Below, piece by piece: positions 3,592 to 54,521 of a DNA stretch of 64,000 bases. The notes beneath the pieces were generated by a model that worked only from the letters and a program-made list of their open reading frames with translations, was not told the DNA's origin and ran no database searches. The stretch spans positions 400,606-464,605 of IMG/VR virus record IMGVR_UViG_3300023174_000033. One strand, 5' to 3'. The translations under genes and the position numbers were made by a program. Each line of letters begins with the position of its first letter. Within the stretch, counting starts at the first letter, position 1.

Positions 3592-4116
3592 GTGAAATTC
3601 ATTAAAAGTTATAAAATTTTTGAGGCAGATGGTACTTTTATGTATGACCCATCAATTGAAAGTATATTACCAGAATATATTAAGATAATTAAGGGGAATC
3701 CAAAAAACCCACTTAGATTAGCTTATAAAAAAGGTATATCAAGACACCTAGGACCAGAAGTTCAAATACCATATGAAACGATGGATAAGAATGGTGGTAG
3801 GGAAAATCCAGACACTTTAGAATTTGACATATATTGGAACTACGATACAAATACTAGTAGTTTAAATATAAATGTCGAAGTAAATTATGGTGATTTAACT
3901 GCTTGTCAATTCTCCATAGAAGCTCCTAATAAAGTTGATGTGATAGTATATACCTCATTACACTCAAAAGATGACCCATCAAATACCGTGTTTGCAATAG
4001 ACGATGAAAGTTTGCAATCATTCTGTAATTACATCAACAAATGGGATCATGGTATCCATATAAATCGCGAAGATTTGAAGTTTATGGACAAGTACGATAA
4101 TTACTTACCTACTTGA
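3592..4116 (+). CDS. Hypothetical protein with MKxIKxF(E)-type N-terminal tag
   Basis: Starts MKFIKSYKIFEA (GTG). AATATATA at 3579-3586. Confidence 0.8.
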   Translation: MKFIKSYKIFEADGTFMYDPSIESILPEYIKIIKGNPKNPLRLAYKKGISRHLGPEVQIPYETMDKNGGRENPDTLEFDIYWNYDTNTSSLNINVEVNYGDLTACQFSIEAPNKVDVIVYTSLHSKDDPSNTVFAIDDESLQSFCNYINKWDHGIHINREDLKFMDKYDNYLPT

Positions 4117-5351
4117 TTTCTATCCCAAGTTTCAATTCCAAGAATGTGATACACTTTATCACTTGGATCCTCTACTAAATCCTTCCTAATGGCCAATTCC
4201 ATAAGTAACAATTCCATTTCGTCGTTCAAATCATGGGATTCCAAATCATAGTTCTCAAGTATCTTTATACCTATAAGTGGGTCTTTTTGAAACTTTGATA
4301 TAATCATATCAAATATTTCAATTTGTTTTGACAGAGACTTACCCCGCAAGTTCCTTGAGGAATTAGGTGCATGGTTTACCAACTTTGACAGTTTCTCTAT
4401 ATTAACGTTTTTTGGGTTTACGTCAAAATATCCATTGAAAGTTAAAGAAGAATCAATTATAGGGTGTAATTTGTACCAAGCTTTTTCATAGTCTTTCTTA
4501 TGAAGAATATTTCTCATATAATAAAGATAATCCTTTGAAAGATGAAGTCCACTTATATCATCTTTCTTGTATTTATCACTATCCACTTTTGATTCTAAAG
4601 ACCAGATATGATCACTTGACCCATAATTTGAGAGTAAGTAAACTTCCAAATCTTTTTCTCTAACCAATTTGAACCTTGATTTTAGGTCAGATTGATATTT
4701 TTTGAACATTTTAGCATATCTGTCTTTGAATCTATACTTATGACTATCGATAAAACACCTACTTCCAATAATAGTAGCAATCAAATCCAATTCTATCTCT
4801 GGTAAAGTAGCTTCCAAATCATACTTTTTCTTTACTAATCTGATAGCAGAGTGTGGTGGTGAACTTAAATTACAAAGACGCAACTCACCAGTTTTCAAAA
4901 ATTCCTCAAAATCTTTTGTCCAAATAAATTGATCAGTTTCAATATCGTATCCAAGTTGACAAGAGTTTATATCAAATGAATCTAGTACTAGAGATTTATC
5001 ATCCGTGGTGGAAAAATATTCAATATTGTTATAAATACCATCTACAGACACTTTCTCAATAGTGTAGTAACCCTTTTGTTGATATCCTATATTAAGACCG
5101 GTGTAATCTTCATAAACCCATTTTTCATTTCTAATAAAATGTTGCTTTGATTTTAACTCTCTATTTGTAAAATCCTTTTTGACACCAATCAGATGATAGA
5201 TATCTAAATCATTCACTGGTGCATTCTTACCAGATATTATATTCCATACCACATTTCCGATTGATCCTCCTGCTAGAAAACCAGATTTTGGAAGTTCCCA
5301 TTTTGATTTGATTTGGTCAAGTGCTTGACGAAAGATTTCTTGATATTTCAT
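4101..5351 (-). CDS. Divergent nucleotidyltransferase (poly(A) polymerase/CCA-enzyme head-like)
   Basis: AGGSI...NDLDIY and SFDINSCQLGYD resemble class II NTase head motifs. The RRD motif is not seen. Confidence 0.55.
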   Translation of the reverse strand: MKYQEIFRQALDQIKSKWELPKSGFLAGGSIGNVVWNIISGKNAPVNDLDIYHLIGVKKDFTNRELKSKQHFIRNEKWVYEDYTGLNIGYQQKGYYTIEKVSVDGIYNNIEYFSTTDDKSLVLDSFDINSCQLGYDIETDQFIWTKDFEEFLKTGELRLCNLSSPPHSAIRLVKKKYDLEATLPEIELDLIATIIGSRCFIDSHKYRFKDRYAKMFKKYQSDLKSRFKLVREKDLEVYLLSNYGSSDHIWSLESKVDSDKYKKDDISGLHLSKDYLYYMRNILHKKDYEKAWYKLHPIIDSSLTFNGYFDVNPKNVNIEKLSKLVNHAPNSSRNLRGKSLSKQIEIFDMIISKFQKDPLIGIKILENYDLESHDLNDEMELLLMELAIRKDLVEDPSDKVYHILGIETWDRNQVGK

Positions 5352-5366
5352 AATAATTTATTAGCA

Positions 5367-5374
5367 CAAAAATA
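5367..5374 (-). promoter_or_regulatory. Bacteroidetes -7 element (TATTTTTG)
   Basis: 15 nt upstream of ATG 5351. Confidence 0.5.
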
Positions 5375-5431
5375 TTAAATTTTTTTCAAAAAACAAAGAT
5401 TTTATATTTTAAATCTTATATATAATTGTAT

Positions 5432-5584
5432 ATGAAAAAGGAAAAAAAGTGGAGTAAGAATTGGAAATATTTAGGCATAGGTTTGTTATTTTTAGCTATA
5501 CCTGGTTCAACTTTTTTACTACCAGCGTTGTTGGCAAAAAAAATTCATGATAATAAGGATACAAACGATATTTTGGGCATATAA
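5432..5584 (+). CDS. Small single-TM protein (50 aa)
   Basis: MKKEKKWSKNWKYLGIGLLFLAIPGSTFLLPALLAKK..., below the track length cut-off. Confidence 0.55.
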   Translation: MKKEKKWSKNWKYLGIGLLFLAIPGSTFLLPALLAKKIHDNKDTNDILGI

Positions 5585-5606
5585 TGTTTAACTAATTATA
5601 CATTAC

Positions 5607-9586: not shown

Positions 9587-10417
9587 TTATAAATCTGAAA
9601 TTACAATAGTTTTTACAACTTTTATTCCAACGTCTCCAGGCAGTATTGTAATCACTAAAATTTCATTGTTATTGTTTTTCATAATACCATCTACATCAAT
9701 CACAATAATAATAGAAACATTATACTCTTCAAAATAAAATGAATATCTACCAGATACTAAAATTTCCTTTCCAATCATTGATGGGAATATCTTATCTAAA
9801 AACCTTTTGAATATCCCATTGAAATGTTTTATTGATTGAAATGAACTTCTTTCAGCAATTCTTTTAGTTAAGTCATGTTCTGATGTATTATACCACTTTA
9901 CTTTGAATAATAACTTTTTACCATTCCACCTTTGTTTACAAGTATGCTGACTTACAAGTTTAACATCTGGTTCAGCTGGTGGTGGATTTAATTCTTTTGG
10001 TAGGTCTTTTATTAGATCAGCTAGTCTTGCTTCATTAACTTCAAGTGTGTCACTTAACATTTGTTTAACACCGTCCAACCCATCACACTTATAATAATAA
10101 CTATCAAATGTATTTTGATTGTAATCTTCAATAAAATACCAATCGTCATCATAGTGGAAAATGAAAATGACTTGATCTTTATTTATTGAAGTGTGGTAAT
10201 ATTCACTTGTGTTTGTTTGATAAATTTGTACTTTTGGCCAGTCTGGTGTTTTGTTGGATGGATCAAATATTTTTTTGAACAATCTTTCCAATCTTAATCT
10301 TTCTGATTCATTTACCCCATCATATTTAATTTTTGATGTTATATCACTGAATTTTCCCCTAGTAATTTTCTCATATTCACCACTACCAAATACATCAAAA
10401 CTTTCCAAATATTTCAT
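9587..10417 (-). CDS. MKYL-tag protein: YxCD-family domain plus a second, possibly RNase-fold, domain
   Basis: MKYLESFD start, DWYF...YYKCDGLDGV motif, C-terminal module EHDLTKRIAERS...ILVITIL. AATATATA at 10430-10423. Confidence 0.8.
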   Translation of the reverse strand: MKYLESFDVFGSGEYEKITRGKFSDITSKIKYDGVNESERLRLERLFKKIFDPSNKTPDWPKVQIYQTNTSEYYHTSINKDQVIFIFHYDDDWYFIEDYNQNTFDSYYYKCDGLDGVKQMLSDTLEVNEARLADLIKDLPKELNPPPAEPDVKLVSQHTCKQRWNGKKLLFKVKWYNTSEHDLTKRIAERSSFQSIKHFNGIFKRFLDKIFPSMIGKEILVSGRYSFYFEEYNVSIIIVIDVDGIMKNNNNEILVITILPGDVGIKVVKTIVISDL

Positions 10418-10430
10418 CAGTTTATATATT

Positions 10431-10461
10431 AAAAAAACCCTCTGATTTCTCAGAGGGTTTT
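10431..10461. terminator. Bidirectional intrinsic terminator
   Basis: AAAACCCTCTGA-N4-TCAGAGGGTTTT. Confidence 0.8.
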
Positions 10462-11109: not shown

Positions 11110-11550
11110 CTAAAAATTTTCCTTTAAACACTCCTCAACACCTTCGATAGTATCACAAACCCACATTCTTGAATTTACATTTCTTGAACCAGGTGTCTCT
11201 GGTATAAAACATTCAATCAACCATATATCATCTTCCAGTTTTTGAATAACCAGATCGCATTTAAAAGGTATATCTAAATCAAAAACATATTCCCTTCTGT
11301 AATCAGTTAAACCTTCTCTATGAGTCATTTCATACTTTTGTTTATCTACATGAGCTAATGGAAATCCTTTGGATCTAATATACTCCTCTACAAATCTATC
11401 TAAATTTTTATCTTCTTTTGGTGTTATATCATCTTGGTGACCCCAATATTCTAATTGTTCATAACTATGGGCAGTTAATCTATTATAGATCTTTCCTTCT
11501 AATTTATCATATGCTGATAGATTTTCATTAAATCTTTTTAAGTATTTCAT
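11110..11550 (-). CDS. MKYLK-tag, YxCD-family protein
   Basis: MKYLKRFNE...DIWLIE...WVCDTIEGVEECL. Confidence 0.85.
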   Translation of the reverse strand: MKYLKRFNENLSAYDKLEGKIYNRLTAHSYEQLEYWGHQDDITPKEDKNLDRFVEEYIRSKGFPLAHVDKQKYEMTHREGLTDYRREYVFDLDIPFKCDLVIQKLEDDIWLIECFIPETPGSRNVNSRMWVCDTIEGVEECLKENF

Positions 11551-11984
11551 AACCACTTATCAAGTAATATTTTAAGTGAATCAAATTCATCACATTCATA
11601 GTATTCAGAAAATCCATCAATTGTAGTTTCTTCATCAAAAATATCATCACCTTGAAATATACGAACATAATACCAATCATCCTTATTTTTGTAACAATCA
11701 AAACAAATTAAATTAGCATTTCCACCATTTGAATACATATAAATAACAAAATTATCTGGAAGTTCTTTTTTATCCGAAGTGAATCTGTTGTAGATAAAAC
11801 TAGAACGATTATTATATTCCACATCTTCTATTTTTCTACTCTTATCAAATACAGATTCTAAATATAAAAGTTCTTTTTCAGTAAAATAATCTCTTGTCTT
11901 TTTTTCTGGATAAAAATCTTCATAGGAAATATTTTTAGGTTCAGCAGGTCCAAACATATTTTCAAATAACTTTAGATATTTCAT
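11547..11984 (-). CDS. MKYLK-tag, YxCD-family protein
   Basis: MKYLKLFENMFGPAEPK...DWYYV...YYECDEFDSL. Confidence 0.85.
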   Translation of the reverse strand: MKYLKLFENMFGPAEPKNISYEDFYPEKKTRDYFTEKELLYLESVFDKSRKIEDVEYNNRSSFIYNRFTSDKKELPDNFVIYMYSNGGNANLICFDCYKNKDDWYYVRIFQGDDIFDEETTIDGFSEYYECDEFDSLKILLDKWL

Positions 11985-12430
11985 TTAAGTTTAGCTTCTT
12001 TTTTTAAAAGATTTAATAAACAATCAAACCCATCACATTCATAATATTCTTCATAACCTTCAAAATATCCTTCATCACTATCCCAATTATCTTGATAAAA
12101 ACTTACTAAAAACCATTCATCTTTACATTTTTGGACATGAACTTCAAATGGATATGGATTGCCTTCATCATAAGTTGGTAGATAAAAAGTTAAATAAGTA
12201 AGACCAATTCTGTAATAATCAACTTTTTCACTTAATCCAAGATTATCCCATTCTTCTTCTTCCATATGGCAACGGTCACTATCTTCCATTAAATTAACAA
12301 GGGTTTCCATTTCAGATTTACTGAAAAACTCCTTACCCAAAGATTTTAAAAGTCTTGACCATTCACTATTGGTGATTTTTTTTGGTTCAGCAGCTCCAAA
12401 TATGCTTTCAAATCTTTTTAAGTATTTCAT
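11981..12430 (-). CDS. MKYLK-tag, YxCD-family protein
   Basis: MKYLKRFESIFGAAEPK...EWFLV...YYECDGFDCL. Confidence 0.85.
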   Translation of the reverse strand: MKYLKRFESIFGAAEPKKITNSEWSRLLKSLGKEFFSKSEMETLVNLMEDSDRCHMEEEEWDNLGLSEKVDYYRIGLTYLTFYLPTYDEGNPYPFEVHVQKCKDEWFLVSFYQDNWDSDEGYFEGYEEYYECDGFDCLLNLLKKEAKLK

Positions 12431-12864
12431 AGGTTTAAAAGTTCTTCTAATTTTTCTATTAAGTCTTCAAATGTGCTACATTCGAACTTTCTAACAACCT
12501 CATCACCACCTTTTTCATCAAATTCAGCATAACCCAAATAAAACCAATCAGGATCATCCACCTTATCCCTTTTTGAAATTTCAATTGCTTTTACAATATA
12601 TTTCCCCCTTGGGTAGTTACTGGTTTTCTCTACTTTTCTAAAATCATTAATAGTATAATGGGTCTTATCATAATTTAATTCCAATAACCTATCATATTCT
12701 AAACTCAATTCATACCTTCTTATAAAATCAGACATCTGTTCTATTTCAGAAGTGGTGAATTCTGATAAAGTAACTGACCTTGAATTCACCCTTCTCCACC
12801 AATCATCGAAGTCGAGTTCAGTTGAACCAGAATAAAAGTTTTCAAATCTTTTTAAGTATTTCAT
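12427..12864 (-). CDS. MKYLK-tag, YxCD-family protein
   Basis: MKYLKRFENF...DWFYL...FECSTFEDL. Confidence 0.85.
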   Translation of the reverse strand: MKYLKRFENFYSGSTELDFDDWWRRVNSRSVTLSEFTTSEIEQMSDFIRRYELSLEYDRLLELNYDKTHYTINDFRKVEKTSNYPRGKYIVKAIEISKRDKVDDPDWFYLGYAEFDEKGGDEVVRKFECSTFEDLIEKLEELLNL

Positions 12865-12867
12865 AGT

Positions 12868-13293
12868 TTATTGTATTTTTAATAAGTTCAAAACAGAATC
12901 AAACCCATCACATTCATAATATTCTTCATACTCATAGTAAACTTCCCCTTCTTCATCTTGATACTCATCTTGATAAAAACTAACCATAAACCATTCATCT
13001 GGACACTTTTGTATATGAACCTCTATTGGTAGAGGATTAACATCACCACCTCCAATATAATAAGTTAGATAAGTAAGACCAATAACAAAATTATCTAACT
13101 TTTCACTCCAACCAAGATTATCCCATACTACTTGTTCTCGACCACTACTTTCCATTAAGTCAATCAAAGTTTTATGCTCTGATTTGGTAAAGAAATCTTT
13201 TCCAGATTTAATTTTAATTGACCATTGACGTTCACTTATCTGTTTAGCTTCAGCAGGTCCAAACATAGATTCAAATAATTTCAGATATTTCAT
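12868..13293 (-). CDS. MKYLK-tag, YxCD-family protein (close paralog of 11981..12430)
   Basis: Start reassigned to MKYLKLFES at 13293. AATATATA at 13305-13298. Confidence 0.85.
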   Translation of the reverse strand: MKYLKLFESMFGPAEAKQISERQWSIKIKSGKDFFTKSEHKTLIDLMESSGREQVVWDNLGWSEKLDNFVIGLTYLTYYIGGGDVNPLPIEVHIQKCPDEWFMVSFYQDEYQDEEGEVYYEYEEYYECDGFDSVLNLLKIQ

Positions 13294-13357
13294 TAAGTAT
13301 ATATTAAAATTTTTTATATTTTGCAAAACATTAGAAATAACAAGAATATAAGGTGAT

Positions 13358-18191: not shown

Positions 18192-18500
18192 TCATCCTTT
18201 CATTTCTGATATTTTATCATCAACCATTGAGTGAATTTCGTCCTCTTTCTTGTCTCTACAAGAATATTCTAACATATCAAATAGTCTGTCAGATTCGGCT
18301 TGTGTGATTTGACCATCATCAACCTTACTTACTAAATAATCATTTAGTACATCGGCGGTATTTCCGAAAAACTTTCCAATTTTTCTAAATATCTTATCTG
18401 CTGTTTTGGAACCGATTCCACCACCTTCTCCTTTGGAACTGTATCCGTGGAAAAGTTCCTCATTTTTTCCGAATTCTTCAAATCTAGCAATCTTACTCAT
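18192..18500 (-). CDS. Hypothetical protein with tag-like N-terminus
   Basis: MSKIARFEEF...NEE. AATATATA upstream. Confidence 0.75.
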   Translation of the reverse strand: MSKIARFEEFGKNEELFHGYSSKGEGGGIGSKTADKIFRKIGKFFGNTADVLNDYLVSKVDDGQITQAESDRLFDMLEYSCRDKKEDEIHSMVDDKISEMKG

Positions 18501-18553
18501 CTTTAAATACTTTAATTTATGTAATTGTATATATTAAATGTAAAAACTCTTTT

Positions 18554-19000
18554 TTACATTTTCCAATATTCCAATTTGTAAGCAAAAGTTTTTAATATTT
18601 TAGGTAAATATTTCATTCTAACATCTTGCCAAATGAATATTTCATTCCCACCAGTTAAACCATCCATCCTAATAAAGAATTCAATAAATCCACCTTCCCA
18701 TTGTTCCCAAGGATTCATTTTCCAACTCGGGTAGTGGTTTATTTTCATACCACATTTGATTGCAGTTGGTGCTTTGTGTATAACTTCATCAAATTTCAAT
18801 TTTGACTCTCTCCTAGCCATACCACTGAGTTCTTCAACTCTCTCATATTCACAAAGTTTATGACCCAATCTCATAAAATCTTCATTGAACTTTTCATCAA
18901 TCACTTCAATTTGCAGAGGATGATGGACATTCATAGCCTGATGAGCTACTGAATAATCAATAAACTTTTTGAAATCGGTGTCCAAAATAACAGTTTGCAT
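18554..19000 (-). CDS. Hypothetical protein
   Basis: AATATATA at 19012-19005. Confidence 0.75.
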   Translation of the reverse strand: MQTVILDTDFKKFIDYSVAHQAMNVHHPLQIEVIDEKFNEDFMRLGHKLCEYERVEELSGMARRESKLKFDEVIHKAPTAIKCGMKINHYPSWKMNPWEQWEGGFIEFFIRMDGLTGGNEIFIWQDVRMKYLPKILKTFAYKLEYWKM

Positions 19001-19015
19001 ACTTTATATATTAGT

Positions 19016-19495
19016 TTAAACCATTGGATTTAAAATATTTAAAATGTATTCAGCTCTTGGATAAAAACCATCAACTAAATCACCTTTGTACGATTTTGTT
19101 TTGAATCCATTTTGAGTAAAATCACCCCAATACTGATTGTTTGTTGTTTCTACCCAATAATAAAGTGTATCTGAATAGTAAGTATAGTCAAGTAAATATT
19201 CCCTCGCATCAGTAATAAACTGTAAAAATTCTGAATCTGTCAACTGACTTCTCATATAAGATGTAACTACATCTACTTTTTGTTGTCTATTTTCTGGATT
19301 TAGTGGTGGAGTATATTCCATTGATGGGAGTGTATTAACCCACTGAAAATCTGAATTAACACATCCTGAAACTTCTTGGCCTGATATGAACCAATCACCG
19401 TTTATATCTTGTACTGGATTAAAATAAGATGCTGGTGCAAATAATTGACCAACAAGTAAATCCTTTTGTTCTATTGTTAATTTATATAATATCAT
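19016..19495 (-). CDS. Hypothetical protein, probably virion-associated
   Basis: Last gene of the fibre operon. Contains YFNPVQDINGDWFIS. Confidence 0.7.
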   Translation of the reverse strand: MILYKLTIEQKDLLVGQLFAPASYFNPVQDINGDWFISGQEVSGCVNSDFQWVNTLPSMEYTPPLNPENRQQKVDVVTSYMRSQLTDSEFLQFITDAREYLLDYTYYSDTLYYWVETTNNQYWGDFTQNGFKTKSYKGDLVDGFYPRAEYILNILNPMV

Positions 19496-20346
19496 ACTTG
19501 TCTAGCTAATGTTGTTTGAAAATTTTGTACTATTGTATATAGCGTTGCAACTTCTGTATCTGTTAAATCATACCCAATACTACAAAATGCACATTCTTTA
19601 TCAGAAAATTGAGTAGCGGCACCATTTGAATTATTTCTAGCACCTATGTATAGGGGAAAATTTCCAAGAAAAGTTGTTACACTTGTTACATTTTGACCTT
19701 CCCTTACACCATTTTTATAAGCTCTTCTATCAGCAAATGAAACTTTATTACCAACCCAAAATCCTTGACCACCTGAAGTGCTAGTAAATTGAGCTGCTTG
19801 AGCACCCCCACCAGAATAAAACTGAGAAGCTACCATAAGTTGTATGAATGAGGTAGCATTATTGGATCCAACTTCCGATCTAGTAGCATTTAATGTATTG
19901 GTCCTTGAATAGTATGAAATGTGGTGTCTTTCTTGTGGTATGTTATCCAGTGTATTAACATAAGTATTAGCAAAGGTGTTTGTAGCGTTGGGTAAAATAC
20001 CGTTTGAAGAGTGTGTCCAACCCCCAGAAAATGTTAACCTAAAAGCTGTATCAGCATCTCTTGGGTCTTTCAAATTATATTGGTGTGCAGTAGCATTTCC
20101 ACCAACAAAGGGGTAGACAGCTAACATTTTATTCATTAATCCCGTATTAACCAAATCATAAGATAGTTGATTTATAGCAGCTTGTTGATTAGAAACAGTT
20201 ATACCAGTAATTGATATAAAATTTACAGCATAAGTGTTATAGTTACCTAATTGTCCAATTGGCATAGTTGGAAAGCTAGATGGTATGGATACTGTTCCAA
20301 TAGAACCCATTCCAAAATTAAGTCTTTGTGTAAATCCTGCAAACAT
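19492..20346 (-). CDS. Putative virion structural protein (beta-sandwich/LamG-like)
   Basis: Thr/Asn/Gly-rich, with NGILPNATNTFANT and LYIGARN...ECAFCSIG. Adjacent to the collagen fibre gene. Confidence 0.6.
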   Translation of the reverse strand: MFAGFTQRLNFGMGSIGTVSIPSSFPTMPIGQLGNYNTYAVNFISITGITVSNQQAAINQLSYDLVNTGLMNKMLAVYPFVGGNATAHQYNLKDPRDADTAFRLTFSGGWTHSSNGILPNATNTFANTYVNTLDNIPQERHHISYYSRTNTLNATRSEVGSNNATSFIQLMVASQFYSGGGAQAAQFTSTSGGQGFWVGNKVSFADRRAYKNGVREGQNVTSVTTFLGNFPLYIGARNNSNGAATQFSDKECAFCSIGYDLTDTEVATLYTIVQNFQTTLARQV

Positions 20347-20352
20347 AACTTT

Positions 20353-20772
20353 TTAAAAATCTCCTCCTGATGCCCAAACTGTTAATGATTGTGTTGAAGC
20401 ATTTATACTAGAACTCACCCATATAGATTGACCAGGCATTAATTGTAAATCAGTGTATGTATTTATTACCCTTGCAGAAACTGCAGTAGTTGATGGTGTT
20501 GTTGCGGTAAAAAGTAATTCATCATACAATCTAGCACTTGCACTAGAACCAGTTGTATCTGTTACATAAATATAAACCAAACCAGCTGGATTACTATTAG
20601 TATATTTACCACCTATTTGTGTTACTTTTGTTCCAGAAAAACCAGAACCACTTGTACCTGTGATTAAAAGGAAAGAATTAGCTGTGGAGGATGTTCTTGA
20701 ACCACCAGTTGAATTATTTACTGTGACTAACCTATATTGAGGAGTTGATGCGAATTGTGGATTTGCTGCCAT
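20353..20772 (-). CDS. Putative virion structural protein
   Basis: MAANPQFASTP start, Ser/Thr-rich. AATATATA at 20786-20779. Confidence 0.65.
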   Translation of the reverse strand: MAANPQFASTPQYRLVTVNNSTGGSRTSSTANSFLLITGTSGSGFSGTKVTQIGGKYTNSNPAGLVYIYVTDTTGSSASARLYDELLFTATTPSTTAVSARVINTYTDLQLMPGQSIWVSSSINASTQSLTVWASGGDF

Positions 20773-20792
20773 AGAATTTATATATTATTTTT

Positions 20793-23657
20793 TTAATAGT
20801 TGTAGAACAAAAATAAATTTATTGCTGGATTATTTACACCAGTAGCACCTATTGGACCTTGATTTCCTTGTATACCAGTTGGTCCTTGAACTCCTTGTGG
20901 TCCACCAGCAGGACCAGTAGCCCCTTGTGGCCCAATAATACCATCTATTTTAGAAATTGTAATCCTTGAGTTTGGTTCATTTTGTAACCATCCAGAACCG
21001 TTTATTGTAACAGTACCAGCTTGGTCAGAATTTAAATAAGCTCTTATATCAAAGTAATCATTTTGAGCAAGTGTTATGATGAAAGAAAACATCACAGGTT
21101 GTCCATAACTATCACTCAATAAAATACTATTTGACGAATACCTATTATTTGAGTTTGTACTTTGACCATTTTTTACACCATATACCTGTAATGATGTTGC
21201 AAAATCATTAGCACCAAAAGTGGAAATAAAACCAGAAACAGCTACTGTGATAGTAGATGTGTTTATGTTTGTAAATGAATAAGAAGCTCCACTATAAGTT
21301 ACACCCAGAGATCCAATAGTATTTGATGTATCTATGTTTGGCCAAGGTATTATCCCCTCTGTATTGGGTGATATTGATGTGGCATTTGTTTGGTCTCCAA
21401 ATCTACCTATACTTGCAAAACTTGTTCCTGCAGTTGGACCTTGAACACCTATAGCTCCTTGTGGTCCAGTATTTCCTTGTAGACCAGTTACACCTTGTGG
21501 ACCAGTTACACCTTGGACTCCTTGAAAACCTTGAGGACCTTGCAGACCTTGAAATCCTTGTGGACCAGTTGTACCAGTTCCAGCACTAACTATAAATAAT
21601 GCTAAGTTATTATTATTAGAAAAGTTATGGGTTGCACTTAATAAACTAACTTTCACCTCAACATAACCAGTTTGTATAGAAGCATCCGTAGTCACTACCC
21701 ATTTTTGATAATTATTTGAATTTCCTTGGTCCTGTAAGATTAATATATCATTAACTTTTATCAAAGCCAATATAAAATCTATATCTATATTATCATTTGT
21801 TATATGTGATATATTTAGTTGTGTTGCTGATGTCTGTGTAGCATTATCCCATAGAATATATTGACTACCAGGGTTACCACTTGTTAATGTTGTTTTGGCC
21901 TTATATAAGAAAGTATTGGTTGAACCACCAGCTGGACCTTGGTCACCTTGTGGACCTTGGTCTCCTTGAAATCCTTGTGGTCCATCAAAACCCTGAGGTC
22001 CCATATCTCCTTGTGGACCTTGGTCTCCTTGAAATCCTTGTGGTCCATCAAAACCTTGCGGACCATCAAATCCTTGCGGACCATCAAATCCTTGCGGACC
22101 ATCAAATCCTTGCGGACCATCAAATCCTTGCGGACCTGGATCACCCTGTGGACCTGGATCACCCTGTGGACCTGGATCACCCTGTGGACCTGGATCGCCC
22201 TGTGGACCTGGATCGCCCTGTGGACCTGGATCGCCCTGTGGACCTGGATCGCCCTGTGGACCTGGATCACCCTGTGGACCTGTGTTACCTTGAACACCCT
22301 GGAATCCTTGTGGACCAGTATTACCTTGAAAACCCTGAGGTCCAGTAAATCCTTGTGAACCAGTAAGTCCTTGATTCCCCTGTGGACCTTGTAAACCTTG
22401 GAATCCTTGGAATCCTTGTGGACCTGTAAATCCCTGAGGTCCTTCTATACCAATAGACAATGGTACAAAAATCATATCGTGTCCATTAGTAAATGAATAA
22501 CCACCATTAACATAAGTAACTGGTATTGAAACATAACTATTAGGTGTAATACTAGTTGTCCCACTAACTGTCCATTTTTGATAGTTATTTGAGTTATTCT
22601 CATCTTGGAGTATTAAACTATCACCAGTTTTAATCAATGCTAAAAATACATCTATATCTACACCATCTCTTGTTAAGTGAGAAACATATAATATAGTTGA
22701 GCTTATTTGCGTGGCATTATTCCACACAATCTGTGAGTTATTTGGTGGAGGTGATTGTGTATTTGTTCTAGCATTATATTTGTAATAAGATACTGATACA
22801 CCATCAGCACCAGCAGCACCAGTTCCACCTTGAATACCTTGTACACCTTGAAATCCTTGTGGGCCTGTATAACCTTGAAATCCTTGTACACCTTGAAATC
22901 CTTGTGGGCCTGTATAACCTTGAAATCCTTGTGGACCAGTAGTTCCCTGACTACCAGTTGAACCTTGATTTCCAGTAGTTCCCTGACTACCAGTTGAACC
23001 TTGAGGACCAGTATTACCTTGAGCACCAGTACCACCAAAAGCACCCCCTTGAATACCTTGAAATCCTTGAGGACCAGTATTACCTTGGTTTCCAGTACCT
23101 CCACCAAGTGGTCCCTGAGCACCAGTATTTCCCTGAGGACCAGTATTACCTTGATTACCAGTACCACCACCTAAACCACCTTGAACACCCTGTGGTCCAG
23201 TATAACCTTGAAATCCTTGTGGACCTTGGATTCCTTGTACACCAGTAAAACCTTGGGGTCCCTCTGTGCCGGCACCTGTTATGACAAGACCACTGGTGGT
23301 GGTAGCAAAAATCAGTGTATAATCATCAGTACTATTATGTGTTAAAGTATATGTTGTTATTTCTTGGAAACTACCATCCAATACTTGAACTACCGGATAA
23401 TATCCAAAACTATGTGTTATTGTTAATGTATCAGAAGAACTAAAAGTGCTATTTAAAATGGAGGGAACCCCACCAGATCCTTGTGGACCTTGTTGACCTT
23501 GTGATCCAGTCTCACCATTAGCCCCTATAACACCATTTCCCCCAGAAATTTCCAAAAGATTTCCATCACCATCATAAAATTGACCATCGATATATTGGAC
23601 CATCACTGGCAATTTTTCGAAGGTTAATTGAAATATTTTATTTGGTAAATCTGCCAA
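20793..23657 (-). CDS. Collagen-like fibre protein with two repeated globular inserts
   Basis: Long (Gly-X-Y)n blocks separated by two similar domains (WNNATQ...NNYQKW and WDNATQ...NNYQKW). TTG start, AATATATA at 23682-23675. Confidence 0.9.
21930..22290 (-). repeat. 18-nt coding tandem repeats (GPQGDP x ~8, GPQGFD x ~5)
   Basis: Units such as TGTGGACCTGGATC(A/G)CCC at ~22131-22280. Confidence 0.9.
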
Positions 23658-23717
23658 ACTATTTGCTTTATTTTTATATATTAATACCGACAGAACTCAA
23701 AAAAAATTTTAATTATT

Positions 23718-24561: not shown

Positions 24562-24972
24562 ATGGAGTATATAAAATTATTTGAAAGTTTTTTTAGTGGT
24601 GGAATGCCTGAAGAAATCACCAGTGAACAATGGAATGAATTGCAAATAACAGAAAAAGATGAATATGGAGAAATAATCAAAAACTCTCCAATACCACCTT
24701 ATCTTTTTAGAGAAATTGTTGCAATTGGTGGTGCGGAAAGATACTTACCAACTAGAGAAGGTGGATCTATTCAGATGCACGGCAGAAGACCAAACACTAA
24801 ACATTTATATGTTGTGTATTTTACACCCAAAGATGATGCTCCTTTTTATTTAATAAGATTTTCAACAGATAATAACCCACCAGAAAGAGTACAAAAGGAA
24901 AAGGGTTTTGTCAAGCTTTATGTAGCTGATGATTTTGAACAAGTGAAAAACTTTTGTAAAGAAAATCTATAA
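24562..24972 (+). CDS. MKYL-like-tag, YxCD-family-like protein
   Basis: MEYIKLFESF...LYVADDFEQV. AATATATA at 24549-24556. Confidence 0.8.
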   Translation: MEYIKLFESFFSGGMPEEITSEQWNELQITEKDEYGEIIKNSPIPPYLFREIVAIGGAERYLPTREGGSIQMHGRRPNTKHLYVVYFTPKDDAPFYLIRFSTDNNPPERVQKEKGFVKLYVADDFEQVKNFCKENL

Positions 24973-26825: not shown

Positions 26826-27068
26826 TTGTTCAAGAGTTCAGACTATTTCAACGTCGTATGTATCGAAAATTGTAAATCTACCAAAGAATTCTGGCCAATA
26901 ACAATTGGTAAGCATTATCAAATCAAAAGTGGTTGGAAAACTTCAAATATTGCCTTCTATAACATAATAGCTGATGATGGAAAAGAATGGATAATACCAT
27001 CTACTTTTTTCAAATATGTAGATGAAGTAAGAGAGATAAAGATAGAGGAAATCCTTACTGTAAATTAA
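26826..27068 (+). CDS. Small VCI-family protein with C-terminal tag
   Basis: VVCIEN...TIGKHY...ADDG...FKYVDEVREIKIEEIL. Confidence 0.8.
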   Translation: MFKSSDYFNVVCIENCKSTKEFWPITIGKHYQIKSGWKTSNIAFYNIIADDGKEWIIPSTFFKYVDEVREIKIEEILTVN

Positions 27069-27796
27069 CCAGCTTTCCTCCTGCCAAGTGAATCTATACT
27101 CCCATCATGCTTGAACTCACTAACCATTCCAGAAAGATAAATAGTTCCAAAATGGTAATCATCTTTCGGGTCAAATAAATAGTAATCATAACCCGTGAAT
27201 ATCTTATTATAGTCACTCATAAGTGTTCTCCACTCATTAGTTCTTCTTCCCACCGCCCATATATTCTTCGAATTTTTATAGTCATTGATGGGTACACTTA
27301 ACAAATCATAATTATTTCCCTGTTTATATGGACTTGACTGTAACCAATCCTCAAATCCATCCCAACCATCAACTAACCACCAGTCTTTGACAAAATAAAT
27401 ATCTTTGGTTCCTTTCAAAGTAAGGTGACTTGCATCTACTGGTAGTTCAGTTTGAATTAAAAAATAATCATCTTGGTATTTAGCTAGACTCATATCTTTC
27501 CTAAATCCATTTGGAATTTCAACTTTCCAATTTACTTGATTGATTTTTCCTGAAGTACCAGTTGCTGGATAGAGTGATCGACTAACAAGTTGTAGACCAG
27601 TTAGTTCTGGTTTTAAATATTTAGTAAATAACTTTTCAATTTGTAATAAATCACTTGAATTTAGTTCTTCTGTGCCCGGACTCTTTTCCATATCGAAGAA
27701 AAGGTCATTGAAAAGGTCTTGACCTAAATTTACATAGGTTGAACTTTTCAAATACTTTTCGTGTCTTGACTCATTGAATTTCCTTAAATATCTCAT
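27065..27796 (-). CDS. MKYL-tag, YxCD-family-like protein
   Basis: MRYLRKFNE...DYFLI...WLVDGWDGF. AATATATA at 27812-27805. Confidence 0.8.
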   Translation of the reverse strand: MRYLRKFNESRHEKYLKSSTYVNLGQDLFNDLFFDMEKSPGTEELNSSDLLQIEKLFTKYLKPELTGLQLVSRSLYPATGTSGKINQVNWKVEIPNGFRKDMSLAKYQDDYFLIQTELPVDASHLTLKGTKDIYFVKDWWLVDGWDGFEDWLQSSPYKQGNNYDLLSVPINDYKNSKNIWAVGRRTNEWRTLMSDYNKIFTGYDYYLFDPKDDYHFGTIYLSGMVSEFKHDGSIDSLGRRKAG

Positions 27797-34047: not shown

Positions 34048-34062
34048 CAAAAATAATATATA
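34048..34062. promoter_or_regulatory. Back-to-back promoters: TATTTTTG (minus) and AATATATA (plus)
   Basis: The motifs occupy 34055-34048 and 34055-34062 in a 23-nt divergent gap. Confidence 0.6.
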
Positions 34063-34066
34063 ATCT

Positions 34067-34438
34067 ATGAAATACCTAAAAATATTTGAAAGTTTTAATC
34101 AAGGGAAATATTATTGGCCAATAACTGCAACTGAGTTCAATAAGTATGTAGAAACATTTGAATTTACAGAACAAGAAATTGAAGCAATAAAAAGTATCTG
34201 TGATAAAAGATTTACTGAAATGGATTTTGAATTTTATACAAGCTGGGATATACCACCAACTGGTTCAATAAATTTGGAGACAAATACAGGTGGTCAAAAC
34301 TTATATACTATAAGAACAAGAATAGACAAAGAAAATGACGAATATTTCGCAGTCGCATATAATATTGATAGGACACCAGAATATTACAAAGCAGACCAAT
34401 TGGAGGGTCTAATAAAACTTTTGGAAGATATCTTATGA
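34067..34438 (+). CDS. MKYLK-tag, YxCD-family protein
   Basis: MKYLKIFESF...EYFAV...YYKADQLEGLIKLL. Confidence 0.85.
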   Translation: MKYLKIFESFNQGKYYWPITATEFNKYVETFEFTEQEIEAIKSICDKRFTEMDFEFYTSWDIPPTGSINLETNTGGQNLYTIRTRIDKENDEYFAVAYNIDRTPEYYKADQLEGLIKLLEDIL

Positions 34439-34881
34439 AATACCTAAAAATATTTGAAGAGTTTTCTGATTTCTATAAAAAAATACGAAATGACGATATC
34501 AATCCTAAAAAAATCATTGATATTGATTTAGGTATACAGAATATGATAGAATCAAGATTAAAGCACAAATCTACTTTTTCATATTCCATATACCAACCAT
34601 ACATGGGTAGTATGTTGAGAGGAAATCAAAGGAAATTAAAGATTGAAACAGATATAATCGTTACACATGGTTCTCCAGATAAAATGGTAAAACCCTTAAT
34701 CAAAAAACACAATACTATGATTGTTGAGATGGAAGATGAGTGGTTTATAGTTTCTAACCAGACAAGATTTGATGGTGGTGGTTCTTGGGCTACTCCAAAG
34801 TCATTGGATATTGAATTATATGAATGTGACCAAGAAGAAGGACTTTTGGAGTTATTAAAGAAATTAGATATAATAAAATGA
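34435..34881 (+). CDS. MKYLK-tag, YxCD-family protein
   Basis: MKYLKIFEEF...EWFIV...LYECDQEEGLLELL. Confidence 0.85.
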   Translation: MKYLKIFEEFSDFYKKIRNDDINPKKIIDIDLGIQNMIESRLKHKSTFSYSIYQPYMGSMLRGNQRKLKIETDIIVTHGSPDKMVKPLIKKHNTMIVEMEDEWFIVSNQTRFDGGGSWATPKSLDIELYECDQEEGLLELLKKLDIIK

Positions 34882-35312
34882 AATACCTAAAAATATTTGA
34901 AGGTAGTGAAAGTTTTTTTGGAACCTCCAACTATGGTGATTTTGAAATAAATAAACCCGCCCATAAAGTCATATTCAATATGTTCATATGTGATTATGAA
35001 TCACCAAATTGGAAAGAAAATGTTGAAATCCTAAAAGGTATAAACTTCCCAACAAGTATAGAAAAATCAAAAGGTTATCATAAAGGTTTATCTATTCAAG
35101 TTTTACTTGATATGGACATCCAATCAGCAAAAGAGTTCTCTGATGAAATCGTCAATATGTTTTTAGATAAACCACTTATCGTTATTGCTGAGGTAGATGT
35201 AATAATGAAAAAACAACCAATAGGTTATTACTTTGATAAAGACCTATGGGAACCTGGTAGATATTTTGATAAACTAATTGAAAGTGGTGAAAAAGGAGTA
35301 TTTATACATTAA
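34878..35312 (+). CDS. MKYLK-tag protein with an unrelated body
   Basis: MKYLKIFEG start, no YxCD motif. Confidence 0.8.
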   Translation: MKYLKIFEGSESFFGTSNYGDFEINKPAHKVIFNMFICDYESPNWKENVEILKGINFPTSIEKSKGYHKGLSIQVLLDMDIQSAKEFSDEIVNMFLDKPLIVIAEVDVIMKKQPIGYYFDKDLWEPGRYFDKLIESGEKGVFIH

Positions 35313-36977: not shown

Positions 36978-37877
36978 ATGAAGAAATTAAAGACTTTCGA
37001 ACAATTCAAAGAAAAAAATGTCCAAGAAGGCATAAAGGATTATTTATTAGGTGGTTTAGCCACAATAGGTAGTATGGTTACTACACCAGAAACCTCTTAT
37101 GGACAACAAAAAACCCCAAAAGAAGTTACTTCGCAACAAGTCAGTGATAAAAAGGACATACTGGGTAGACCATTAACAGCAGCACCCCCCACAAAAACTG
37201 AGAATCTTGGAAAGCGTAAGTATTTAGTAACCACTAAACAAATAAACCCAAGTCCACAAAAGGATGCTGAATTAAAAGCTAAGGGGTATAAACCAGTTTG
37301 GACTGAGACTGTAAAGTCTACACCAAAATGGGGAGTTGAGAGTTCTGAAAGAAAAAAGCCAGTTGTAATGAAATCGGATAATGATAAGTTCTTTGAACTC
37401 GGTGGATATACTTTAACACAACAAGTAAAAGATACAATACAAGCAAGGATTAATAAATTGGGTGGTGTTGATAGTGTGAAAGTTGAAGCTTCTACTGATA
37501 AAACTCCATTGACTAAGAAACTAAAAGCTGATTTAGAATCAAAAGGTTATTCGGGTGATAACACTGGACTTTCAAAAGCTAGGTCAAATGCTATTAAAAA
37601 CTTTTTGATTAGTATTGGTGTAAATCCATCAAATATCGTTGAAGTTAATTTGGCCGACCAAGGTAAAGAGGGTGGTTATGACCCAAGTGCTAGATATGTA
37701 AAACTTACTCTAATTGAAAAAGGTAGTGGTACTGGTAGTGGTGAAGAATATTTCCAAGAAAAGGAAGAAATAGTTGTTTACTATCAAAGAGTAAATGATA
37801 TGATGCAGAAAATGGTCAAACAAAGATATGGTACACCTATCGATTGTGAAGGTGGTAACTGTGCCACTTATGATTGA
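36978..37877 (+). CDS. OmpA-like peptidoglycan-binding-domain protein with N-terminal tag
   Basis: FFELGGYTL...VKVEASTD...NTGLSKARSNAIKNFL...ARYV. Starts MKKLKTFEQF. Confidence 0.75.
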   Translation: MKKLKTFEQFKEKNVQEGIKDYLLGGLATIGSMVTTPETSYGQQKTPKEVTSQQVSDKKDILGRPLTAAPPTKTENLGKRKYLVTTKQINPSPQKDAELKAKGYKPVWTETVKSTPKWGVESSERKKPVVMKSDNDKFFELGGYTLTQQVKDTIQARINKLGGVDSVKVEASTDKTPLTKKLKADLESKGYSGDNTGLSKARSNAIKNFLISIGVNPSNIVEVNLADQGKEGGYDPSARYVKLTLIEKGSGTGSGEEYFQEKEEIVVYYQRVNDMMQKMVKQRYGTPIDCEGGNCATYD

Positions 37878-41083: not shown

Positions 41084-41117
41084 AAAATTTTTATAGTTTT
41101 TTCTTTTATATATCATG

Positions 41118-53300: not shown

Positions 53301-53810
53301 ATGAATATGGCAAATATTAAAAGATTCAATAACTTCATAAACGAAGAATGGTTTTGGGATAAAAAAACGAAAAAAGAAGAAGAGGAGGAAGCTCAAGCTC
53401 AAAGGCAAGCTGATGCTGAATTAATTGATGTGGAAGAAAAACCACTTGCAGGTGGTGGAAAATTAATAGAAGTTGAGCAAGATTTCTACAAAGATTGGTT
53501 TAATATAATTCCAAAACATGATGAATTTTTACAAGTAACGTTTGTAGCAGATGAAAATACAAACCTAACAATCTACAAACCAGATGTTAGATTCTTATCT
53601 AAAGATCCAAAAAAACCTAATCCAGAAGAAGATGGGGATGAAAATATATTCATCAGATATGATAAAAAAGATAATCCACAACTAAATCAAGCTGTTCTAA
53701 AGAAAATGGAACAGGAAAAAATTATCGCAACAAAACATTATATGTCTTTGATTAAACCAGAAGGTATAATGATGCATTGTGGTAATTTAATGTCAATTGT
53801 GGTAAAATAA
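53301..53810 (+). CDS. Hypothetical protein with N-terminal tag
   Basis: MANIKRFNNFINEE. Confidence 0.8.
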   Translation: MNMANIKRFNNFINEEWFWDKKTKKEEEEEAQAQRQADAELIDVEEKPLAGGGKLIEVEQDFYKDWFNIIPKHDEFLQVTFVADENTNLTIYKPDVRFLSKDPKKPNPEEDGDENIFIRYDKKDNPQLNQAVLKKMEQEKIIATKHYMSLIKPEGIMMHCGNLMSIVVK

Positions 53811-53827
53811 AAAATATTTACGAATAA

Positions 53828-53854
53828 ATAACCCTCTTAAATGAGGGTTTTTTT
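53828..53854. terminator. Intrinsic terminator
   Basis: ACCCTC-TTAAAT-GAGGGTTTTTTT. Confidence 0.75.
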
Positions 53855-53863
53855 TGATATATT

Positions 53864-54127
53864 TTAGTTTCTTCTACCGCCTCTCGGTCCGTGATGGTGT
53901 TTTCTTGGTGTATTTAGGTTAATTCTTACAGTCGGTCTGTAAAAATTGTTATAGTTATATCTATTATTTACCCACCAATAATTACGATAGGCTAAACTAT
54001 TTGGTAGATAAACAACACTTGTAGCTACGGGCAATGGTTGAACAGATACTCCAACACCGGTGTTTGGACTAACTATTGTACAAGAATTTAACAGAATTAG
54101 TAGAAATATAATTAAAATGTTTTTCAT
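53864..54127 (-). CDS. Small lipoprotein
   Basis: MKNILIIFLLILLNS|C. Basic His/Arg tail. AATATATA upstream. Confidence 0.7.
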   Translation of the reverse strand: MKNILIIFLLILLNSCTIVSPNTGVGVSVQPLPVATSVVYLPNSLAYRNYWWVNNRYNYNNFYRPTVRINLNTPRKHHHGPRGGRRN

Positions 54128-54215
54128 ATTCACTGTTATTTTTGATTATATATTAATTCTACTTGTAAGTTAATATTAAATTTTTTAAATATATTTTTAT
54201 ATATATGATCTACTT

Positions 54216-54521
54216 ATGCGAATATTTGGTAAATTCTTTGAATTCAAAAGGCAACTAATCGTGACTGATGAAAATGTGCAACAAGTTTTGGACAGTTACG
54301 AAAACGAAATTGTACAACTTGAGGAGGCCAACCTAAACCTTATGAGAAATGTAAGGAAATTGGAAAGTCAAATTAAATTTTATCAAGAAAGATTAAAAAT
54401 TGTTGAAACAATAAAAATTGATGAAAAATCAAAAGTAAACCTTTGGAAAATCATCGCAATAATATCCATATTATTCGGAATTCTCTCATGGATGTCATCA
54501 TTCAAAAATTTGACTTTTTAA
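54216..54521 (+). CDS. Coiled-coil protein with C-terminal TM
   Basis: Heptads followed by LWKIIAIISILFGILSW. Confidence 0.7.
   Translation: MRIFGKFFEFKRQLIVTDENVQQVLDSYENEIVQLEEANLNLMRNVRKLESQIKFYQERLKIVETIKIDEKSKVNLWKIIAIISILFGILSWMSSFKNLTF

What the first reader, a model, noticed from the sequence alone, without database searches (positions are those of the whole stretch)
3592..54521. Shared N-terminal MKYLKxFE tag on ~15 proteins: candidate capsid-targeting signal for an injected protein arsenal
Seen: near-identical N-termini on proteins at 3592 (MKFIKSYKIFE), 10417 (MKYLESFD), 11550, 11984, 12430, 12864, 13293 (MKYLK[R/L]F[N/E][E/N/S]), 18500 (MSKIARFEEF), 24562 (MEYIKLFESF), 27796 (MRYLRKFNE), 34067, 34435, 34878 (MKYLKIFE), 36978 (MKKLKTFEQF) and 53307 (MANIKRFNNFINE), with a weaker case at 45385. 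The bodies include unrelated folds (OmpA-like, 3592, 34878, 53301), so the tag is modular. Nearly every transcription unit is preceded by AATATATA. Established: T4 internal proteins carry a ~10-residue capsid-targeting sequence (MKTYQEFIAE type) that directs packaging and is removed by the prohead protease after Glu. Inference: this is an analogous, greatly expanded address code loading many late-made proteins into the head for delivery at infection.
Basis: partly seen in the sequence, partly recalled or inferred. Interest (0 to 1): 0.85.

Follow-up and report, generated by a model that had tools for sequence, protein, structure and literature searches.

The report
Shared N-terminal tag on late phage proteins
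About fifteen late proteins of an uncultured 465-kb phage of Bacteroidota start with the same ten-residue peptide (MKYLKxFExF), and relatives with T4-type head genes suggest, without proving, that it loads proteins into the phage head as the T4 capsid-targeting sequence does.

Summary
All 15 listed N-termini are present. A strict motif hits ten times in the six-frame translation, every time straight after a start Met, and the DNA pattern occurs 7 times against 0 expected.

Ten of the 15 proteins are one paralog family. Five have unrelated bodies, so the window shows six body types, not fifteen.

The tag is not private to this genome. In public viral contigs it heads at least 122 distinct proteins in 89 body clusters. 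Matches in cellular genomes look like chance.

The carriers are myoviruses with T4-type head genes (Portal_T4, S77 protease, Gp23). There the gene between portal and protease always starts with a tag variant, followed by a conserved [L/I]-x-E site. The AATATATA motif before the window's tagged genes also precedes portal, protease and capsid genes in relatives, so it is the late promoter. In cultured phage PAU, 17 proteins share a related tag, including all three annotated internal capsid proteins and the scaffold.

Limits remain. Sequence similarity to the T4 CTS is not significant. Cleavage after Glu8 is not general. The window's own head genes were not retrieved, and nothing shows packaging or injection.

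Verdict: a probable capsid-targeting peptide, a new variant of a known kind.

The parts
3592..4116 (+). Tagged gene, GTG start, (M)KFIKSYKIFE|ADG, 174 aa. The body is unrelated to the family. The late-promoter motif TAATATATA lies at 3578-3586.
   Evidence: A homolog with a 44% identical body sits beside a T4-type head module in L463 and starts MKYLKLFEGF.
9587..10417 (-). Tagged gene, MKYLESFDVF, 276 aa. It has the family domain followed by a C-terminal extension. The promoter lies at 10423-10431, just after a hairpin and T-run.
   Evidence: E = 8e-11 to a body-only profile that did not include it.
11110..13293 (-). Operon of five tagged paralogs: 12868-13293, 12427-12864, 11981-12430, 11547-11984 and 11110-11550. 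They start MKYLK[LR]F[EN] and end with a YYECDxFDxLxxLL-type C-terminus. One late promoter lies at 13298-13306. Starts and stops overlap.
   Evidence: AlphaFold model of 12868-13293: tag helix at residues 2-9 with pLDDT about 50, coil at 10-16, then a body with pLDDT 80-90.
18192..18500 (-). Tagged gene, MSKIARFEEF, 102 aa, unrelated body. The promoter lies at 18528-18536. It sits directly downstream of the late cluster that includes the collagen-like gene.
24562..24972 (+). Tagged gene, MEYIKLFESF, 136 aa, a family member. The promoter lies at 24548-24556.
27065..27796 (-). Tagged gene, MRYLRKFNES, 243 aa. It has the family domain followed by an extension. The promoter lies at 27805-27813.
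   Evidence: E = 2e-23; it was not in the profile.
34067..35312 (+). Operon of three tagged genes: 34067-34438, 34435-34881 and 34878-35312. All start MKYLKIFE, encoded by 24 identical nucleotides. The first two are family members and the third has an unrelated body. The promoter lies at 34054-34062.
36978..37877 (+). Tagged gene, MKKLKTFEQFKEKNVQE|G, 299 aa, pI 9.2, with a borderline OmpA-like C-terminal part and no transmembrane segment. A TTATATATA motif ends 23 nt upstream of the start.
53307..53810 (+). Tagged gene, MANIKRFNNFINE|E, 167 aa (or 169 aa if it starts at 53301), unrelated body. A TTATATATA motif ends 29 nt upstream of the start.
18554..23683 (-). Untagged late genes that share the promoter motif: 18554-19000, 20353-20772 and the collagen-repeat protein at 20793-23657. 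The motifs lie at 19005-19013, 20779-20787 and 23675-23683. This cluster serves as an internal reference for the late class.

Best explanation
The tag is M-[KR]-x-[LIV]-[KR]-x-F-[END]-x-[FY]. It is most likely a short amphipathic N-terminal peptide that directs late-made proteins into the assembling prohead core of a T4-related huge phage of Bacteroidota. [quoted passage not shown]

Shown:
- The tag is strictly N-terminal.
- It is conserved at the peptide level.
- It sits on unrelated bodies.
- It is restricted to viruses.
- It co-occurs with T4-type head genes.
- It shares its promoter motif with head genes.
- In head-module proteins of relatives it is followed by a conserved [L/I]-x-E-x-A site.
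- It is predicted to lie outside the folded body.

Inferred:
- The tag binds the scaffold core.
- An S77 protease removes it where an [L/I/V]-x-E site follows.
- The cargo stays in the head.
- Some of the cargo is delivered to the next host.
For: 1. Position and modularity. All 10 strict matches in the window follow a start Met. In viral contigs, 130 of 154 matches start ORFs of at least 70 aa, giving 122 distinct proteins in 89 BLAST clusters. In cellular genomes only 18 of 121 matches start a plausible ORF. The tag heads 3-6% of ORFs in loci that were fetched for portals, not for tags, and 0 of 1223 cellular ORFs.

2. Peptide-level selection. All synonymous codons are used, at about the frequencies seen in the gene bodies.

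3. T4-type machinery in carriers. Sheath, terminase, gp46-like protein and head protease were found. L066 has Portal_T4, Peptidase_S77 and Gp23. Six contigs hold both tag hits and LR745206-type portal or capsid genes.

4. Head-module position. In 36 of 38 distinct proteins encoded between portal and protease, and in 28 of 29 encoded after the capsid gene, the tag is followed by [LIV]xE ending at residues 12-21. In alignment A5 the tag is followed by a spacer of variable length and then an invariant E and A. T4 has its prohead core genes 67 and 68 in that slot.

5. Late class. [AT]ATATATA lies within 65 nt upstream of portal genes (80/89), protease genes (64/75), capsid genes (57/75) and tagged genes (48/60) in LR745206-like loci. 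All nine tagged transcription units of the window have it.

6. Cultured analog. Phage PAU has 17 proteins starting MK[TS][LI]..L[YF]E, 13 of them around portal, protease, scaffold and capsid genes. All three 'internal capsid protein' annotations and the 'scaffolding' annotation carry it.

7. Structure. The tag is a low-confidence helix, or disordered, ahead of a confident body in two unrelated proteins.

8. Literature on T4. Ten residues suffice for targeting. Residues 4 and 7 target, and residues 8 and 10 govern processing. T-even internal proteins are diverse and share only the CTS (PMC9026906, PMC3012670).
Against: - No significant sequence similarity to the T4 CTS. A profile of the 15 window tags scores IPII and IPIII at -11.4, and 552 of 1918 cellular N-termini score higher. 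IPI ranks only third of 90 T4 ORFs. The regex that picks exactly the three T4 internal proteins was written after seeing them.
- A gp21-type site is missing from six of the 15 window proteins. It is not enriched at positions 9-22 in the wide tagged set: 21% against 27% in controls.
- The head genes of the window's own contig were not retrieved. Its placement in the clade rests on the shared tag, the shared promoter motif and a few homologs.
- I could not find the basis of the PAU annotations in any paper.
- The cultured relative PTm1 has no tag in its head region.
- One tagged protein elsewhere (L087) has a transmembrane segment straight after the tag.
Confidence: 0.55

Rival explanations
1. 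The tag is a functional N-terminal helix of late proteins, but not for packaging. It could recruit them to a membrane, a chaperone, a protease or another assembly site, or drive oligomerisation.
For: The tag is amphipathic (hydrophobic residues at 4, 7 and 10) and predicted to be helical. It sits on enzymes that could act in the cytoplasm: a SET domain, an AAA_33/zeta-like kinase and a 2OG oxygenase. In L087 it sits directly ahead of a transmembrane segment. Half of the tagged proteins lack a T4-type processing site.
Against: This does not explain why the tag marks the gene between portal and protease and the gene after the capsid gene, with a conserved [L/I]xE site. It also does not explain why the PAU proteins annotated as internal capsid proteins and scaffold carry the related tag.
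Confidence: 0.2
2. The tag is only a historical signature. The genes would descend from one ancestor, or share a 5' end spread by recombination or gene conversion. The bodies would have diverged beyond recognition, and the tag itself would have no function.
For: Ten of the 15 window proteins are one family. The three genes at 34067-35312 share 24 of 24 tag nucleotides, including the rarer codons TAC and CTA, although their bodies differ. Tagged genes lie in tandem arrays.
Against: A peptide without function would not stay fixed while bodies diverge past detection in 89 clusters across hundreds of contigs, with synonymous changes allowed. The tag is also kept between orthologs while its exact sequence changes, as in 3592 and its L463 homolog.
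Confidence: 0.1
3. The conserved 5' coding sequence serves expression. With the promoter motif only 4-8 nt ahead of the ATG, the mRNAs would have almost no leader. An A/U-rich start coding for MKY... would then favour initiation in a host that does not use Shine-Dalgarno sites.
For: The gap between motif and ATG is 4-8 nt in six tagged units. No Shine-Dalgarno sequences are visible. The second codon is AAA in 89% of tags.
Against: Tags are equally present on internal genes of operons, which have no promoter of their own. Every synonymous codon is used, at body-like frequencies. Conservation is of Phe7, Glu8 and an aromatic residue at 10, not of bases. The portal, protease and capsid genes share the promoter but lack the tag.
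Confidence: 0.07

Closest known systems
[quoted passage not shown]
   Same: Both are N-terminal peptides of about 10 residues that start with MK. Both have hydrophobic or aromatic residues three positions apart and an acidic residue close by. Both are shared by otherwise unrelated small proteins of one phage. Both occur in phages with a gp20 portal, a gp21-family protease and a gp23 capsid protein. In head-module proteins of relatives the tag is followed by an [L/I]-x-E site, like I-A-E in T4.
   Different: There is no significant sequence similarity. The consensus differs and lies in another register. Copy number is far higher: 15 in 64 kb, and 3-6% of ORFs, against three internal proteins plus Alt in T4. 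Many copies lack a processing site. The hosts are Bacteroidota and the genome has about 465 kb. The late-promoter motif is AATATATA rather than TATAAATA. Packaging is experimentally shown for T4 only.
N-terminal MK[TS][LI]..L[YF]E tag of Sphingomonas (Sphingobacterium) phage PAU, carried by gp131-133, gp142-146, gp149-150, gp152-154, gp114, gp164, gp199 and gp220
   Same: PAU is a jumbo myovirus of a Bacteroidota host (PMC3738902) with a T4-type portal and capsid protein. It has many proteins with one shared N-terminal tag and different bodies. They cluster around the head genes but also lie elsewhere in the genome. The depositors annotated three of them as internal capsid proteins and one as scaffolding.
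   Different: The PAU tag is one residue longer ahead of the aromatic residue, and its L-[YF]-E is itself an L-x-E site. An ungapped profile of the window tags does not detect it. I found no paper describing the PAU tag.
Paralogous inner-body and ejection proteins of phiKZ-like giant phages (phiKZ, 201phi2-1, SPN3US). Their N-terminal propeptides are removed by the prohead protease at S/A/G-x-E. This is from my own knowledge and the abstracts of PMC5694885 and PMC7411985.
   Same: These are giant phages that load dozens of different proteins into the head. They have expanded paralog families and proteolytic maturation after Glu.
   Different: It is a different phage lineage. To my knowledge no single short shared address peptide is reported for it, and the cleavage consensus differs.

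Membership tests
T4-type capsid targeting sequence (CTS) | A short N-terminal peptide shared by otherwise unrelated proteins of the same phage | tested here: met
   The window has 15 tagged proteins with six body types. Relatives have 122 tagged proteins in 89 clusters. The tag is strictly N-terminal.
T4-type capsid targeting sequence (CTS) | Detectable sequence similarity to the T4 CTS (MKTYQEFIAE, MKTFKEFTST) | tested here: not met
   A profile built from the 15 window tags scores IPII and IPIII at -11.4, and 552 of 1918 cellular N-termini score higher. IPI scores -1.8. Only a regex written after the fact joins them.
T4-type capsid targeting sequence (CTS) | Hydrophobic or aromatic targeting residues three positions apart near the N-terminus (Tyr4 and Phe7 in T4, PMC9026906) | tested here: met
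   L/I at position 4 and Phe at 7 are nearly invariant, and position 10 is F or Y in 44% of tags. Their function is not testable here.
T4-type capsid targeting sequence (CTS) | A gp21-type processing site, [L/I]-x-E, at the end of the peptide | tested here: inconclusive
   The site is present in 36 of 38 and 28 of 29 head-module proteins of relatives, with an invariant E and A in A5. It is present in 9 of the 15 window proteins. It is not enriched at positions 9-22 in the wide set.
T4-type capsid targeting sequence (CTS) | The phage has a T4-type prohead: gp20 portal, gp21-family S77 protease with scaffold, and gp23 capsid protein | tested here: inconclusive
   This is met in tag-bearing relatives. 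The module of the window's own contig was not retrieved.
T4-type capsid targeting sequence (CTS) | Late expression together with the head proteins | tested here: met
   The same [AT]ATATATA motif lies before tagged genes and before portal, protease and capsid genes. This is inferred from sequence, not from transcripts.
T4-type capsid targeting sequence (CTS) | The cargo is found in the virion, and the tag suffices to package a foreign protein | not testable with these tools
   This needs virion proteomics and reporter fusions.
PAU-type internal capsid protein tag | A shared N-terminal tag on proteins annotated as internal capsid protein or scaffold, clustered at the head module | tested here: inconclusive
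   The architecture is the same, but the PAU consensus is shifted by one residue and the window-derived profile does not detect it. No head module is known for the window.

The most novel reading that the evidence does not exclude
The tag is a portable capsid address used throughout a large, almost wholly uncultured clade of T4-related huge phages of Bacteroidota. Each genome would load dozens of unrelated proteins into the head for delivery with the DNA. These would include enzymes such as a SET-domain methyltransferase, a zeta-like kinase, a 2OG oxygenase and a peptidoglycan-binding protein. The set of injected proteins could then be read directly from sequence.
Probability: 0.4. Interest if true: 0.8.

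Novelty: new variant of a known kind. Interest (0 to 1): 0.62.

Why it matters
If the tag is a capsid address, a ten-residue motif would list the packaged, and possibly injected, proteins of hundreds of uncultured huge phages. No virion proteome exists for these phages. The list would be a shortlist for anti-defence and host-takeover functions.

It would also extend the T4 CTS principle from a few internal proteins of T-even phages to a much larger, lineage-wide system. And it would offer a natural packaging tag for engineering phages of Bacteroidota.

Cultured phage PAU carries a related tag, so the idea can be tested directly.

Tried and rejected
- The window has no near match among GenBank phages. 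The tagged family and the L066 slot protein have no tblastn match there either.
- PHROGs and Pfam give nothing for the tagged proteins or for the window's structural candidates.
- Foldseek of the family model against PDB has no significant hit; the best E-value is 0.1.
- Five attempts to reach the head module of the window's own contig failed. Walking 10 kb at a time was judged too slow.
- Phage PTm1, a cultured relative by portal similarity, has no tag in its 45-kb head region.
- I considered a giant virus of eukaryotes as the source, because of the collagen repeats, GT25 domains, SET domains and low G+C. I rejected it: the genes form overlapping operon-style arrays, the relatives carry tail sheath, terminase and T4-type head genes, and there are T9SS sorting domains and lipoprotein signals.
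- I rejected the idea that 36978 is a membrane protein. Its maximum 19-residue hydropathy is 0.92.
- The 682-aa tagged protein of L001 is not an ortholog of the window's 646-aa protein.
- HMMs of the slot and post-capsid proteins do not detect T4 gp67, gp68, gp22, gp24, Inh or Hoc.
- A full-text search for 'MKYLK' found no relevant paper.
Full report
**What the window is.** The window is AT-rich (about 30% G+C) and densely packed with short genes in operon-like arrays whose starts and stops overlap. It is the last 64 kb (positions 400,606-464,605) of a 464,605-bp viral contig, IMGVR_UViG_3300023174_000033, which is JGI Ga0214921_10000006. It carries tRNA-Ile and tRNA-Met genes. It encodes many proteins with Bacteroidota-style signal peptides and lipoprotein signals, and three with T9SS C-terminal sorting domains. 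So this is a huge phage of a Bacteroidota host. It has no close relative among GenBank phages.

**The observation.** A strict regex has ten hits in the six-frame translation, and every one follows a start Met directly. The back-translated DNA pattern occurs seven times, against none in 100 shuffles. Synonymous codons differ between copies. In a wider sample every synonymous codon is used, at about the frequency seen in the gene bodies. Selection therefore acts on the peptide. The site at 45385 is not a tag.

**How modular the tag is in the window.** Ten of the 15 proteins form one paralog family. It has the tag, a DDW[FY]xV core and a YYECDxFDxLxxLL-type C-terminus. A profile of the bodies alone finds all ten, including two that were left out of the profile. 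The five other proteins (3592, 18500, 34878, 36978, 53307) do not match it.

**The tag elsewhere.** Of these, 130 start ORFs of at least 70 aa. They give 122 distinct proteins, whose bodies fall into 89 BLAST clusters. Some bodies are recognisable enzymes: a SET domain, an AAA_33/zeta-like kinase and a 2OG-Fe(II) oxygenase. The same scan of 596 Gb of cellular genomes gave matches that look like chance. Only 18 of 121 start a plausible ORF, and half read MKYF rather than MKYL. In loci fetched for their portal gene, and so unbiased for tags, a 10-residue regex matches 3-4% of ORF starts, where fewer than 0.4 matches are expected. It matches none of 1223 cellular ORFs. The tag is a virus-specific N-terminal signature carried on many unrelated proteins.

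**Who carries it.** Large ORFs in the tag-bearing loci are tail sheath, large terminase, a gp46-like SbcC, a helicase, a DNA polymerase and a head maturation protease. In locus L066 the gene order is:
- Portal_T4;
- a tagged protein starting MKYLKLFEQFVNEA, with an acidic C-terminus;
- Peptidase_S77, the gp21 family, fused to a long C-terminal part;
- Gp23, the major capsid protein.

T4 has its prohead core genes 67 and 68 in that same slot. The nearest GenBank portals belong to the complete huge phages LR756500-LR756504 and LR745206, the Lak megaphages, phage PAU and Tenacibaculum phage PTm1. A 646-aa window protein has homologs in those same LR genomes. Six contigs carry both tag hits and LR745206-type portal or capsid genes.

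**Head-module proteins.**
- In 66 related loci the gene between portal and protease always starts with a tag variant. Examples are MKHVKLFEQF, MKTIKTFEEF, MKIIKTFEEFT, MKRVRLYEDFIAEDA and MKHLKTFNNY. The gene after the capsid gene starts MKTFENWYTS, MDKFENWFNK or MKIKSFDNWY.
- In 36 of 38 and 28 of 29 distinct proteins, an [L/I/V]-x-E follows with its Glu at residues 12-21.
- In alignment A5 the tag is followed by a spacer of 0-8 residues and then a site with an invariant E and A, of the form [L/I/M]-x-E-x-A.

This is the layout of the T4 CTS. In T4, residues 4 and 7 target, residues 8 and 10 (I-A-E) govern processing, and ten residues suffice (PMC9026906).

AlphaFold models agree with a detachable peptide. 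In the window protein 12868-13293 the tag is a helix at residues 2-9 with pLDDT about 50, followed by a coil and then a body at pLDDT 80-90. In a slot protein, residues 1-13 are below pLDDT 50.

**Timing.** WAATATATA occurs 25 times in the window, against 7 expected, almost always 4-30 nt ahead of a start codon. All nine tagged transcription units have it. So do the collagen-repeat gene and its neighbours. In LR745206-like loci, [AT]ATATATA lies within 65 nt upstream of 80 of 89 portal genes, 64 of 75 protease genes, 57 of 75 capsid genes and 48 of 60 tagged genes. It is therefore the late promoter of this clade, the counterpart of TATAAATA in T4. The tagged genes are late genes. This is inferred from sequence, not from transcripts.

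**A cultured analog.** Phage PAU infects a host that is really a Sphingobacterium (PMC3738902). It has a T4-type portal and capsid protein, and its capsid protein matures from 585 to 520 residues (PMC5646251, Table 1), close to an A-L-M-E site. In the 170 kb of PAU that I read, 17 proteins start MK[TS][LI]..L[YF]E. Thirteen of them surround the portal, protease, scaffold and capsid genes. All three proteins annotated 'internal capsid protein' (gp142, gp154, gp199) and the one annotated 'scaffolding' (gp152) carry the tag. I found no paper that describes this tag or states the basis of the annotations.

**What speaks against the reading, or is missing.**
- A profile built only from the 15 window tags does not recognise T4 IPII or IPIII and ranks IPI third of 90. 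The regex that picks exactly the three T4 internal proteins was written after seeing them. The likeness to T4 is one of design, not demonstrable homology.
- Cleavage after Glu8 is not general. Residue 6 is L/I/V in 39% of tags. [LIV]xE is not enriched at positions 9-22 in the wide set. Six window proteins have no such site. In T4, targeting works without processing (PMC9026906), so this weakens the cleavage claim more than the targeting claim.
- The head genes of the window's own contig were not retrieved.
- PTm1 has no tag in its head region.
- One tagged protein in another contig has a transmembrane segment after the tag. The window's 36978 does not.
- Nothing here shows presence in virions or injection.

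**Rivals.**
- An expression signal for near-leaderless late mRNAs does not fit. Tags sit on promoter-less internal genes of operons, codons vary freely, and head genes with the same promoter lack the tag.
- A purely historical signature fits the paralog arrays and the 24 identical nucleotides at 34067, 34435 and 34878. It does not explain conservation across 89 body clusters.
- A different targeting role remains possible. It does not explain the head-module position or the PAU annotations.

**Verdict.** The most likely explanation, at about 0.55, is a capsid (prohead-core) targeting peptide. That is a new variant of the T4 CTS principle, greatly expanded in uncultured T4-related huge phages of Bacteroidota. 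The 'injected arsenal' part is plausible but untested.

Noticed in passing
window 27815-36368, mostly the - strand (for example 30664-30903, 31970-32200, 32609-32839, 33478-33720, 36111-36368): A second paralog expansion. At least 14 small proteins (66-118 aa) start M[KN].[VI]C[IV] (for example MKVVCIDD, MKAICIRN, MKLVCINN). They lie in one long array with overlapping starts and stops and no AATATATA motif. Their function is unknown.
   Followed up: no
window 4101-5351 (-): A 416-aa protein has a weak precomputed Pfam hit to Gad2 (PF26128) and weak PHROG hits to a nucleotidyltransferase. It may be an anti-defence candidate.
   Followed up: no
window 54811-56574 (+); also 16366-17064, 48097-49869, 47370-48110 and 50432-51040: FolD (tetrahydrofolate dehydrogenase/cyclohydrolase) is fused to a GT25 glycosyltransferase domain. 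The window holds four GT25-domain proteins in all, plus LicD and (by the Pfam hit on its L001/L002 homolog) IspD-like genes. This is an unusual load of glycan-modifying genes for a phage.
   Followed up: partly
window 1-2223 (-), which continues upstream in L589:11353-16395; also 39491-41116 (-) and 41776-43089 (-): The phage encodes proteins with T9SS C-terminal sorting domains. One of them has 1680 aa. The phage therefore appears to use the host's type IX secretion system.
   Followed up: partly
window 20793-23657 (-): A 936-954-aa protein has collagen triple-helix repeats (Pfam E = 1e-52) and sits behind a late-promoter motif. It is probably a fibre or decoration protein.
   Followed up: no
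L326-L405 and L409-L525 (capsid genes of LR745206-like phages): The first 23 nt of the major capsid gene (ATGTCACACATTAGAATAGACAA) are almost invariant at the DNA level in contigs whose portals are only 72-93% identical. This is stronger than the protein sequence requires.
   Followed up: no
window promoter-to-ATG spacing, for example 3578-3594, 13291-13306 and 34054-34069: The late-promoter motif ends only 4-8 nt ahead of the start codon in several units. These late mRNAs would have almost no leader. Head genes of relatives have 20-35 nt.
   Followed up: partly
L129, L135, L141, L150 and about 20 more loci (Bathymodiolus japonicus methanotrophic gill symbiont): The tag pattern hit a repeated element present in many copies in this symbiont genome. 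The match (MKYFKTFEDLHDSV) lies inside a long ORF. It is unrelated to the phage tag.
   Followed up: no
window 63398-64000 (-): A protein is made of short tandem repeats ([22 protein letters not shown] ...) in the higher-G+C end of the window.
   Followed up: no
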